64,000 nucleotides of DNA from Octopus sinensis (Eukaryota): positions 6,758,001 to 6,822,000 of the forward strand of contig NC_043026.1 in assembly GCF_006345805.1 (NCBI RefSeq). Reading direction: 5' to 3'. The position numbers and the translations under genes are program-made. The notes beneath the pieces are model-generated. The model had not been told where the DNA came from. It saw only the letters and a list, made by a program, of their open reading frames with translations, and ran no database searches. Below are positions 35,498 to 38,400 of this stretch, piece after piece. Positions within the stretch are counted from its first letter, which is position 1, and each line of letters starts with the position of its first letter.

Positions 35498-38400
35498 CAT
35501 ATTACATATATATAATACATACATAATATATACATACATATACATATATATATATTATATATATATATATATACACACACATGTATAATCTAGGCACGCA
35601 TAATTGTGTGTGGGGGGGGGTGTAAATAAATGTATGCACATCTGTCTGTCTCTTTCTCTCTCTATATAAAAATCAATATGTATAGACATTTGTGTGTGTA
35701 TAAATATATATTTATGCACATCTGTCTGTATGCGCATGCATAGATGTGTGGGTATGTATATATACAATATGTAATGATATATAGACATATATACACACAC
35801 GCACATAAATACACTGGACCGACAAGACAACAACTACAAGACACCAGAAAGGTATGAAAGAAAGAAGGAAAGACCCCGCCCCCACAAATCATATATACAA
35901 ACATATCTACATATATCTACATATATACACTCACACACATATCTATATGTGTATCTGAGTATGCATATATAACTGTACACATCTTTACACTTAATCAACG
36001 AGAAATGAAAATTGGCCCTTATTCGATCACTTACCTTAGCGGAATCCTTTAAACTACCCATAGCGGGATCAGACACATTTTTGCCAGAAGCGTTTTTCGT
36101 GGCGCTAATAAGATCGGCAAGGGCAGAGGCGACATCTTTGACAGCATTTATCAACAAAACCTATACAGAATAAACAGAACAAAGGGAGAGAAATCAAAAG
36201 GGGTTTATGACGAAATTCTTTCATAATCAGCGTAGAATATTGACTATCAACCCAGCTGCTTTACCTAGGCAGAAGTTGGTAAGAAACTCGTAAGAGCAGG
36301 TCTCCAGAGTATTTTGGCCCTTAATCTCTCACACTCTAAGGCAGTGCTTTTCAAACTTTTTGCTGGAGCGGAACCCCAAGGAAACATTCCACTGGCTCGG
36401 GGAACCCCTGTGCAATAATTTAATAGTCTTATGCACAAATATCTGCACAGGAAAATTAAAAATTACTGCCGATTTTAGCAGTTTTGTAACTTCTTGCGGA
36501 ACCCCTGGACTGTACTGGCGGAACCCTAAGGTTTCGCGGAACCCTGGTTGAAAACCACTGCCCTAGACCATTACAAGCTCACTCTTAAATACTGACCCTG
36601 TAGGCCCTGATGGTAAATTATTTCCCTTATATATTGTTTCTTGATAACTTCTTTTTTTAAACATCCTGACCCTGCTTACCTTCAAATTTCACCTACCCAT
36701 TAATAAATTGTAGTATTCCCTAGACCAGTGCTTTTCAAACTTTTAGCTGGAGCAGAACCCCAAGGAAACATTCCACTGGCTCAGGGAACCCCTGTGCAAT
36801 AATTTAATAGTCTTATGCACACATATTTGCACAGGAAAATTAAAAATTACTGCCGATTTTAGCAGTTTTGTAACTTCTTGCGGAACCCCTGGACTGGACT
36901 GGCGGAACCCTAAGGCTTCGCGGAACCTTGGTTGAAAACAACTGCTCTAAGGGGCCAGGCTGCATCCAGATCATGCCTTCTGGGTGCTCTTCTACTGATA
37001 TTTTTTAACCACTTGGATATTGGAGACTTGTGCATTTAAACAGCTAGAAGATTCCTATCTAAGTTAATTTGAGGATATATTTACCTCTTAAAGAGATGGC
37101 TACATCCAAGAAAACACTGGTTTTATACAGTAAGTCTTTGGGAAATAAAATTTCCCGAAATCAATCCGTATTAAATGAAGAGAAGAAAATGGAGCATTAG
37201 TGGTTAATATTTATTCATTAACCCCTTACCCGGCAGAAACGAATATATACGTTTTGACCGAAATCGTTTTTTTCTGTCTCTGGTGAGTTAACTCGTCAAA
37301 AGATAGACTCGCCAAAATCGACAGCAAACGAGTTCCTTCGTCTAAAAACAGGTTAACTCTTTTCTGCCCAAAGCGGTAATTTAAAATGAATATTATTGAA
37401 TTAAAATTCATAATAAATAAGGTTTGAAATATACCTCGAAATCACCATTCAAAACATAGTAAAATAAAACAATTAAAAAATATGTCTGAAAAAATACATT
37501 TATTTTCAAAATAATTGTTGGGTAAGGAGTTAATAAATAGATATCAACCACTAACTCTCCATTTCCTTCTCTTAATTTAACATGTAGCTGTAGTAAACAG
37601 TCGAATGATCTCCCTTGCAAGAAAGATTATAGAGTAACCTCCCTTTTCTAACTTTCTCGAAACATCTGTGTCATGAGACGTGATTCTTAATTATTCAAGA
37701 AGCTTAGCATTTCTCTTGGAAGTTTCTAGAATGTCTAGTGTTCCATAAATAAAAACAGCTTGCTAACCCTGCTCTTCACTTCTTAGTCGATTAGACTTAG
37801 AGCCGTTCACATCATTGCTATGTCCGTCTATTTCTCTACACCACATGAGTGAAAACCACCGCTTAGCTGTTATTTCTACATTTCCTATCTCTGGACTTTC
37901 TTGCATAGATTACTTCATTCAACTAGATTCTACATTTTCATTCTATGTATCATCAACAACCAGTAAATAAAATACATTTTTATGTAGTAAATCGAGGAAT
38001 GTGAAGACGCAGGCTGGAAAGCGGAACATTTTCCAATTGAAGTCGGATGTAGAGGGTTTGTTGGACACAGCGTGAGACGACTGTTGTCCTAACTCATCAT
38101 AAAGTCAATGCCACCATGACTGATATCCAATCTACAGTGGAGAAGGCTAGCCACTGGATTTGGTTAAAAAGAGACGATGAGCAATGGCTAGAAGGATATT
38201 GAGCTTTATTTGATAACCAGCTGATCTAGCAAGCGGGGCCTCATATCAGTGAGGGGGACCGGTGCGCATTGATGCCGTCGAGAGGTAGGCCTCGAAACGG
38301 TGCGCATTCTCTCCTGATGACCCCATACACTTGCTGACTTCCGGTCTACGGAGCTTTTGACTGGTAGCACTTGCATGTGCGAGTTGTTTGCAAGACATCT

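What the first reader, a model, noticed from the sequence alone, without database searches (positions are those of the whole stretch)
36334..36952. Cointegrate-like hAT-MITE dimer with swapped TSDs enclosing a 157-bp 'inside-out' insert (possible captured DNA circle)
The sequence reads CTCTAAGG(36334-41)-MITE1(219 bp)-CCCTAGAC(36561-68)-149 bp-CCCTAGAC(36718-25)-MITE2(219 bp)-CTCTAAGG(36945-52). Neither MITE has matching flanks. One 8-mer brackets the whole unit, and the other faces inward around the insert. Two independent insertions cannot give this. It is the expected product when the right end of one copy and the left end of a sister copy attack a circular 157-bp target (149+8), or when a MITE-bearing circle recombines into a resident MITE. 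157 bp is about mononucleosome/microDNA size. It may be a fossil of transposon-mediated capture of extrachromosomal circular DNA, or of sister-chromatid (alternative) hAT transposition. The outer TSD could also mean the unit moved as a composite transposon carrying cargo. It sits about 170 nt upstream of the IBS2 exon acceptor.
Basis: partly seen in the sequence, partly recalled or inferred. Interest (0 to 1): 0.82.

Follow-up and report, generated by a model that had tools for sequence, protein, structure and literature searches.

The report
Head-to-tail hAT MITE dimer, composite transposon
Two copies of a small non-coding "jumping gene" sit head to tail in an intron of the talin gene, with flank repeats that two separate insertions cannot produce. 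It is most likely a two-copy composite transposon that moved in as one piece, a tidy fossil of a process already known in maize rather than a new kind of element.

Summary
The sequence reads CTCTAAGG, a 219-bp MITE, CCCTAGAC, 149 bp, CCCTAGAC, a second 219-bp MITE, CTCTAAGG (36334-36952). The two MITEs differ at 9 sites with no indels. Each 8-mer is expected about once per 64 kb, so chance and two independent insertions are excluded. Neither the MITE nor the insert occurs elsewhere in the window. The element is a hAT-type MITE: CAGTG termini, 15-bp inverted repeats, five GGAACC motifs, and exact 8-bp flank repeats of the nnnTAnnn target type.

The mechanism cannot be proved, because the species is in none of the collections searched. 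The best reading is a composite (dimeric) transposon that inserted as a unit. CTCTAAGG would be its target-site duplication. The inner CCCTAGAC pair plus 149 bp would be the founder copy's own duplication and its flanks in swapped order. Maize Ac composite insertions and macrotransposons have this layout.

New support comes from the same window. A piggyBac-like MITE forms a near-identical dimer (222 + 144 + 222 bp). That whole dimer, spacer included, occurs at two loci, with homology ending at the outer termini.

His proposed test does not separate it from the rivals. Moderate interest.

The parts
36334..36341 (+). Outer 8-bp direct repeat CTCTAAGG, left copy. Proposed target-site duplication of the whole composite.
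   Evidence: It abuts the left terminus of M1 exactly and fits the nnnTAnnn target pattern seen in related MITEs.
36342..36560 (+). M1, a 219-bp hAT-type MITE with intact 15-bp terminal inverted repeats and five GGAACC motifs.
   Evidence: It has no Pfam match and no protein relatives.
36561..36568 (+). Inner 8-bp repeat CCCTAGAC, left copy. Proposed target-site duplication of the founder MITE at its original locus.
   Evidence: It is close to the CTAGAC-type targets of related MITEs.
36569..36717 (+). X, a 149-bp unique AT-rich insert (33% GC). Proposed to be the founder copy's right and left flanks joined in swapped order.
   Evidence: It has no copy elsewhere in the window, no terminal inverted repeats, no poly-A, no significant internal repeat, and no similarity to the outer flanks.
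36718..36725 (+). Inner 8-bp repeat CCCTAGAC, right copy.
36726..36944 (+). M2, the second 219-bp copy in the same orientation. It differs from M1 at 9 sites, and all polarisable changes are derived in M2, including one in its outer terminus.
36945..36952 (+). Outer 8-bp direct repeat CTCTAAGG, right copy.
36035..36160 (-). Context: talin exon (42 codons, IBS2B region). The dimer lies in the intron 173 nt upstream of its acceptor.
1254..1857 (+). Precedent in the same window: a piggyBac-like MITE dimer. It reads TTAA, N1 (222 bp), TTAA, 144-bp spacer, TTAA, N2 (222 bp), TTAA.
30724..31318 (-). Second copy of the whole N-spacer-N composite. The spacer is 95.8% identical, and homology ends at the outer termini.

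Best explanation
The 603 bp between the two CTCTAAGG copies form a composite (dimeric) non-autonomous hAT element that entered the talin intron as one unit.

Step 1 (inferred): a single 219-bp hAT MITE inserted at another locus and duplicated its target CCCTAGAC.

Step 2 (inferred): two copies of that one insertion became joined head to tail, with up to 149 bp of the element's own right and left flanks between them in swapped order. This could have happened by a local ~384-bp tandem duplication. It could also have happened during aberrant hAT transposition or repair involving sister copies, as in maize composite insertions.

Step 3 (inferred from the perfect outer 8-bp repeat and from the precedent in this window): hAT transposase used the outermost left and right termini and integrated the whole unit at CTCTAAGG. 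In a composite insertion, steps 2 and 3 are one event.

Step 4 (shown): the copies have since diverged by 9 substitutions, one of them in the outer right terminus, so the unit is old and probably immobile. It has no evident function in talin.
For: The structure is exact and non-random.

Both 8-mers are plausible hAT targets. Related CAGTG...CACTG MITEs of 204-228 bp in JGI contigs carry intact or decayed 8-bp duplications with a central TA, such as ACATAGAG, GGCTAGAC and GACTAGAC. One of those MITEs shares M's termini and its GGAACC motif layout.

X is unrelated to the sequence outside the dimer, so the dimer did not arise by duplicating the talin intron in place.

Maize Ac composite insertions have this architecture: an 8-bp duplication, an element, a donor flank, a junction, the other donor flank, an element, and the 8-bp duplication. 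The flank positions are 'switched', and the whole is described as a macrotransposon (PMC4270019).

Tandem arrays of full-size MITEs together with the sequence between them are described in corals and attributed to slippage (PMC2872659).

There is a direct precedent in this genome. The piggyBac-like N-spacer-N dimer (period 374 bp, against 384 bp here) is present at 1254-1857 and 30724-31318. Its spacer is 95.8% identical between the two, and homology stops exactly at the outer termini. A MITE dimer with cargo has therefore moved as a unit here.
Against: No second copy of the M-X-M unit and no donor locus could be examined. The species is absent from every collection searched. That the unit arrived whole therefore rests on analogy and on the outer 8-bp repeat, which an in-place origin from a resident MITE would also leave.

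All 5-7 polarisable differences are derived in M2 and none in M1. This is unexpected if the two copies were identical at birth (two-sided binomial about 0.016-0.06).

The outer right terminus of M2 is the more mutated end.

In maize, the re-replicated tracts were kilobases long, not 149 bp or less.
Confidence: 0.55

Rival explanations
1. In-place capture of a free 157-bp DNA circle. A resident MITE already sat at CTCTAAGG. After replication, the right end of one sister copy and the left end of the other were cut and integrated into a small circle (149 + 8 bp) at CCCTAGAC. This linearised the circle between two complete copies.
For: It yields exactly the observed sequence and explains both 8-mer pairs. 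X is unique and unrelated to the surroundings. Paired use of termini from separate elements is documented for Ac, and small circles are formed in those reactions (PMC4270019). Two unrelated MITE dimers in the window share a spacer of about 145-150 bp, which could hint at a size-defined substrate.
Against: There is no positive evidence for a circle. A tiny circle is a rare target compared with chromosomal DNA (inference). The N dimer in this window demonstrably moved as a unit, so a circle-free history is enough. The model also predicts copies identical at birth, which sits poorly with the M2-only derived changes.
Confidence: 0.12
2. In-place origin by recombination or repair with a second family copy. 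One version is a ~384-bp circle (MITE + CCCTAGAC + X + CCCTAGAC) recombining with the resident MITE. The other is a break in the resident MITE repaired by copying an ectopic MITE plus both of its flanks, followed by end joining.
For: It gives the same final sequence. Circles of 200-400 bp and templated filler DNA at breaks are established phenomena (my own knowledge, not tested here). It allows M1 and M2 to differ in age.
Against: A crossover or break inside the MITE would make M1 and M2 reciprocal chimeras. Instead, the derived changes run along the whole of M2 (positions 20 to 215) and none lie in M1. No donor is available to test.
Confidence: 0.13
3. Artefact or coincidence: an assembly error, or two independent insertions whose flanks match by chance.
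For: Raw reads were not available.
Against: The joint chance of both 8-mer matches is about 1e-10. The copies differ at 9 sites, so this is not a duplicated read or a collapsed repeat. A haplotype mis-join would duplicate the talin flanks inside the unit, and it does not. The MITE is otherwise absent from 64 kb.
Confidence: 0.03

Closest known systems
Maize Ac/Ds composite insertions and macrotransposons (Zhang, Zuo, Wang & Peterson 2014, PMC4270019; Huang & Dooner 2008 as cited there and in PMC3260210)
   Same: Both belong to the hAT superfamily. An 8-bp target duplication flanks a unit bordered by two elements with outward-facing competent termini. The interior consists of DNA that formerly flanked the donor elements, in switched order. 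The unit has the structure of a transposable macrotransposon.
   Different: The maize cases start from two different nearby elements (Ac and fractured Ac) with reversed ends, and they carry kilobases of flank. Here both copies carry the same inner 8-mer, so both descend from one insertion, and the cargo is only 149 bp. The host is an animal, the elements are MITEs, and the event is an old fossil rather than an observed one.
Tandem arrays of full-size MITEs in Acropora corals (CMITE, PMC2872659)
   Same: In both, complete MITEs are repeated head to tail together with the sequence between them. The coral arrays are attributed to slippage rather than to separate insertions. The N dimer in this window is likewise of the TTAA/piggyBac type.
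   Different: The coral arrays were not shown to be bounded by one target duplication, or to move as a unit. With a TTAA target, swapped flanks cannot be recognised.
Bacterial IS26-type composite structures and cointegrates (IS6 family review, PMC7986276; details from my own knowledge)
   Same: Two direct copies of an element bracket cargo, and a single 8-bp duplication lies outside the pair. A circle of one element plus cargo joining a resident copy gives this layout.
   Different: The enzyme is a different DDE transposase with a different chemistry (replicative or conservative cointegration). No such reaction is known for hAT elements. This is an analogy only.
Small extrachromosomal circular DNA (microDNA)
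   Same: The insert plus one 8-mer is 157 bp, and the repeat period is 384 bp, which falls within the reported small-circle size range (my own knowledge).
   Different: Nothing in the sequence shows that a circle ever existed.

Membership tests
hAT-superfamily MITE | 8-bp target-site duplication abutting the termini | tested here: met
   Two exact 8-bp repeats abut the four termini, though in swapped pairing. Related MITEs from JGI contigs show intact or decayed 8-bp duplications.
hAT-superfamily MITE | Short terminal inverted repeats beginning YARNG | tested here: met
   The termini are CAGTGCTTTTCAAAC and CAGTGGTTTTCAACC, matching at 13 of 15 positions.
hAT-superfamily MITE | Subterminal short repeats (putative transposase-binding sites) | tested here: met
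   M1 has five GGAACC motifs. Their positions are conserved in a related MITE from another organism. Binding itself was not tested.
hAT-superfamily MITE | Small size and no coding capacity | tested here: met
   The element is 219 bp. Its longest ORF is 63 aa, with no Pfam match and no relatives.
hAT-superfamily MITE | Multicopy family with an autonomous hAT partner in the same genome | not testable with these tools
   The window holds only these two copies. The species' genome is in no collection searched.
Composite transposon / macrotransposon | Two element copies with outward-facing intact termini bracketing cargo | tested here: met
   The copies are direct. The left terminus of M1 is intact, and the right terminus of M2 has one substitution.
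Composite transposon / macrotransposon | One target-site duplication flanking the whole unit | tested here: met
   CTCTAAGG lies on both sides of the unit.
Composite transposon / macrotransposon | The same unit at other loci with different flanks, or an empty site | not testable with these tools
   There is no other M-X-M in the window and no genome access. This feature is met for the analogous N-spacer-N unit.
Composite insertion in the sense of Zhang et al. 2014 | Interior consists of the donor element's two flanks in switched order, joined at a repair junction | not testable with these tools
   The donor locus is unavailable. The matching inner 8-mers are what this model predicts for a single-element donor (inference).
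Captured extrachromosomal circle | Donor is a contiguous MITE-free segment that is circularly permuted relative to the insert | not testable with these tools
   The donor is not in the window, and a metagenome scan for X found nothing.
Tandem array / satellite | The insert belongs to an array with a period of about 157 bp or a submultiple | tested here: not met
   Tandem Repeats Finder reports no array over the dimer or X, only simple repeats outside it. The two halves of X share only an 18-nt match (shuffle p about 0.04).

The most novel reading that the evidence does not exclude
Small DNA circles may be involved after all, as a general route in this genome. Two unrelated MITE superfamilies, hAT and piggyBac-like, form head-to-tail dimers of almost identical geometry. 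Elements are 219 and 222 bp, spacers 149 and 144 bp, and periods 384 and 374 bp. This could reflect a size-constrained, host-level step. One candidate is ~380-bp circles that each hold one MITE plus about one nucleosome's worth of flank. Such circles might be copied by rolling circle, or used as a substrate or target by transposase, creating new cargo-carrying composite transposons.
Probability: 0.12. Interest if true: 0.75.

Novelty: new member of a known kind. Interest (0 to 1): 0.42.

Why it matters
The swapped 8-mers are an unusually clean natural record. They show that two copies descended from one hAT insertion were joined around that insertion's own flanks, and that the product sits at a new site like an ordinary transposon.

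If genome-wide data confirm this, it would show in an animal two things so far demonstrated by genetics mainly in maize. MITE dimers can arise from aberrant transposition or repair. They can then act as small cargo-carrying transposons that shuffle short pieces of genomic DNA.

The piggyBac-like dimer, found here at two loci, suggests the process recurs in this genome.

The finding does not bear on talin function. It does not by itself show capture of extrachromosomal circles.

Tried and rejected
**Finding the same species or family elsewhere**
- Protein searches with the exon ORF next to the dimer, with a 239-aa exon-plus-intron ORF, and with the 63-aa MITE ORF found only distant talins or nothing.
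- An exact look-up of the window ORF failed.
- The closest contig, L001, is only about 75-80% identical in exons and has no MITE.

**DNA scans**
- X in metagenomes gave nothing.
- MITE-specific 19-21-mers in viral and prokaryote genome collections gave nothing, or 21-23-nt chance matches.
- A paired-terminus pattern in metagenomes gave 24 loci. These belong to other hAT MITE families in another organism. They helped only for target-site and motif comparison. No dimers were found in those loci.

**Literature**
- Searches for the terminal sequences found nothing for this family.

**Readings considered and rejected**
- X as its own transposon with an 8-bp duplication: it has no terminal inverted repeats and no poly-A.
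- Tandem duplication of the talin intron in place: X does not match the outer flanks.
- X as part of a tandem array.
- A donor within the 64 kb.
- No Rfam family or tRNA is present.

Full report
**What is there**

- CTCTAAGG at 36334-36341
- M1 at 36342-36560 (219 bp)
- CCCTAGAC at 36561-36568
- X at 36569-36717 (149 bp)
- CCCTAGAC at 36718-36725
- M2 at 36726-36944 (219 bp)
- CTCTAAGG at 36945-36952

M1 and M2 align without gaps and differ at 9 positions (95.9%). Each copy begins CAGTGCTTTTCAAAC. M1 ends with the complement of CAGTGGTTTTCAACC, and M2 has CAGTTG at that end. M1 carries five GGAACC motifs.

**Chance**

Dinucleotide shuffles of the window expect 0.81 copies of CCCTAGAC and 1.19 copies of CTCTAAGG on both strands. 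By my arithmetic, the joint chance of both matches at fixed positions is about 1e-10. The terminal motif is otherwise absent, apart from one unrelated 2-mismatch hit. BLAST finds no other copy of M or X in the 64 kb. Two independent insertions are excluded.

**Context**

The window lies inside a talin gene on the minus strand. The nearest exon is 36160-36035, with a tatag|G acceptor and a G|gtaagt donor. It encodes [42 protein letters not shown]. Together with the upstream exon, it matches Pfam Talin_IBS2B above the curated cut-off. Database relatives are named talin. The dimer is in the intron, 173 nt from the acceptor. It is too far to touch the usual branch-point region (inference), and no function is apparent.

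The organism is an unidentified animal. The closest named relative for this exon is an oyster protein at 80% identity.

**What kind of element**

The termini start with CAGTG, which fits the hAT pattern YARNG (my own knowledge). The inverted repeats are short, there are subterminal repeats, and the flank repeats are exactly 8 bp.

A paired-terminus scan of JGI metagenome contigs returned 24 loci from another organism. These hold 204-228-bp MITEs with the same termini. Their 8-bp duplications are intact or decayed and have a central TA, for example ACATAGAG/ACATAGAG, GGCTAGAC/GGGCAGAC and GTCTATAT/GTCTACAT. One of them shares M's first 34 nt at 91% and the positions of the GGAACC motifs.

Both CTCTAAGG and CCCTAGAC fit this target pattern. 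Both 8-mer pairs therefore look like products of real hAT integrations.

**What X is not**

- It has no terminal inverted repeats (shuffle p = 0.21) and no poly-A.
- It has no significant internal repeat. The best match between its halves is an 18-nt stretch, p about 0.04.
- No tandem array is reported over the dimer or X.
- It has no similarity to the sequence outside the dimer and no copy elsewhere in the window.

So X is not a separate transposon. The dimer is not a duplication of the talin intron made in place.

**How such a structure can arise**

The same sequence also follows from circle-free routes that all start from one MITE inserted elsewhere at CCCTAGAC, written Y-B-M-B-Z:
- A ~384-bp tandem duplication gives M-B-Z'Y'-B-M. 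The outer termini then mobilise the unit as a macrotransposon.
- A composite insertion can form in one step, as shown for maize Ac. There the ends of two element copies integrate at a new site with an 8-bp duplication, the elements and their flanks are re-replicated, and the broken ends are joined. [quoted passage not shown]
- Over-synthesis from both ends during gap repair, followed by end joining, would also do it.

All of these predict that the donor of X is circularly permuted around CCCTAGAC.

**New evidence from the same window**

A whole-window repeat scan turned up a second MITE dimer from a different superfamily. It reads TTAA, N1 (1258-1479, 222 bp), TTAA, spacer (1484-1627, 144 bp), TTAA, N2 (1632-1853, 222 bp), TTAA. 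Its termini are CCCTTTCGTTAC..., of the piggyBac type.

The entire unit, spacer included, recurs at 30724-31318 on the minus strand. The spacers are 95.8% identical. Homology starts and stops exactly at the outer termini, and the flanks are unrelated.

In this genome, then, a head-to-tail MITE dimer with about 145 bp of cargo has demonstrably moved as a unit. Corals show comparable tandem arrays of whole TTAA MITEs together with their inter-element sequence (PMC2872659). This precedent is why I prefer the reading that the hAT dimer arrived as a unit. Under that reading, CTCTAAGG is the target duplication of the composite and CCCTAGAC is that of the founder.

**Limits and loose ends**

The species is in none of the collections. 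Three protein searches, one exact look-up, two metagenome scans, two prokaryote-genome scans and two viral scans gave no copy of M, X or the locus. The closest contig is far too distant. The donor of X, other copies of M-X-M and the orthologous intron could therefore not be examined. The preference for the composite reading rests on analogy.

One observation fits none of the simple models well. I polarised the M1/M2 differences using the related MITE, terminal symmetry and the direction of CpG decay. By these criteria, positions 20, 29, 58, 102, 191, 203 and 215 are all derived in M2. None is derived in M1, and two positions are ambiguous. That is a 5:0 to 7:0 split, with a two-sided binomial of about 0.06 to 0.016.

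Copies that were identical at birth should share the changes between them. The pattern does argue against a crossover inside the MITE, because that would make the two copies reciprocal chimeras. It could be chance, or a later repair or conversion of M1.

The near-identical geometry of the two dimers (periods 384 and 374 bp) is also unexplained. With only two cases it may be coincidence.

**Verdict**

This is a real and old structure. It is best read as a dimeric hAT MITE composite transposon, a natural animal counterpart of maize composite insertions and macrotransposons. Circle capture is not excluded (about 0.12), but nothing supports it. I class it as a new member of a known kind, of moderate interest.

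Noticed in passing
window 1254-1857 (+) and 30724-31318 (-): A piggyBac-like MITE dimer: TTAA, N (222 bp), TTAA, 144-bp spacer, TTAA, N, TTAA. It is present twice, with the spacer 95.8% identical and homology ending at the outer termini. It is therefore a dimeric MITE that transposed as a unit. Its period is 374 bp, against 384 bp for the hAT dimer.
   Followed up: yes
window 41009-41210; 12882-13161: A solo, 5'-truncated N copy lies at about 41.0-41.2 kb. At about 12.9-13.2 kb there is a diverged N-like copy, followed about 12 bp later by the first ~80 nt of another copy. This is one more head-to-tail arrangement.
   Followed up: partly
window 36342-36560 versus 36726-36944: All 5-7 differences that can be polarised are derived in M2 and none in M1, including M2's outer terminus. 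This asymmetry is unexpected if the two copies were identical when the dimer formed.
   Followed up: partly
window 37171-37580: Another MITE-like element sits in the same talin intron, about 220 bp from the dimer. It has 61-nt inverted-repeat arms (87% complementary) separated by 288 nt, and it is single-copy in the window.
   Followed up: partly
window 27562-27935 and 29157-29362; N spacer 1484-1627: A repeat family of about 100-105 nt occurs in short tandem runs. The middle of the N-dimer spacer is 73-81% similar to it, so the N founder probably sat in or beside such a repeat.
   Followed up: partly
window 4226-4584, 8708-8903, 13582-13970, 24062-24724, 33634-33829, 47892-48681: An interspersed repeat with units of about 170-240 bp often occurs as 2-3 tandem units. 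It may be SINE-like or a satellite carried by a transposon.
   Followed up: no
window 11759-12091 (-), 41477-41998 (+), 61537-62070 (-); also 17620-17753 and 51242-51375: Another dispersed repeat shows up as long spurious ORFs that share the peptide [16 protein letters not shown]. The window is also very rich in TA/CA microsatellites, and it holds a ~500-bp AAT-rich array at 14350-14857 beside a talin exon.
   Followed up: no
L023:1885-2093, L025:6786-6994, L009:11059-11267, L027:7750-7958: The 209-bp hAT MITE, with the same flanking 8-mers, appears at four loci fetched from JGI metagenome contigs. It shares M's termini and GGAACC motif layout. This group of hAT MITEs therefore exists in at least one other, unrelated organism.
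   Followed up: partly
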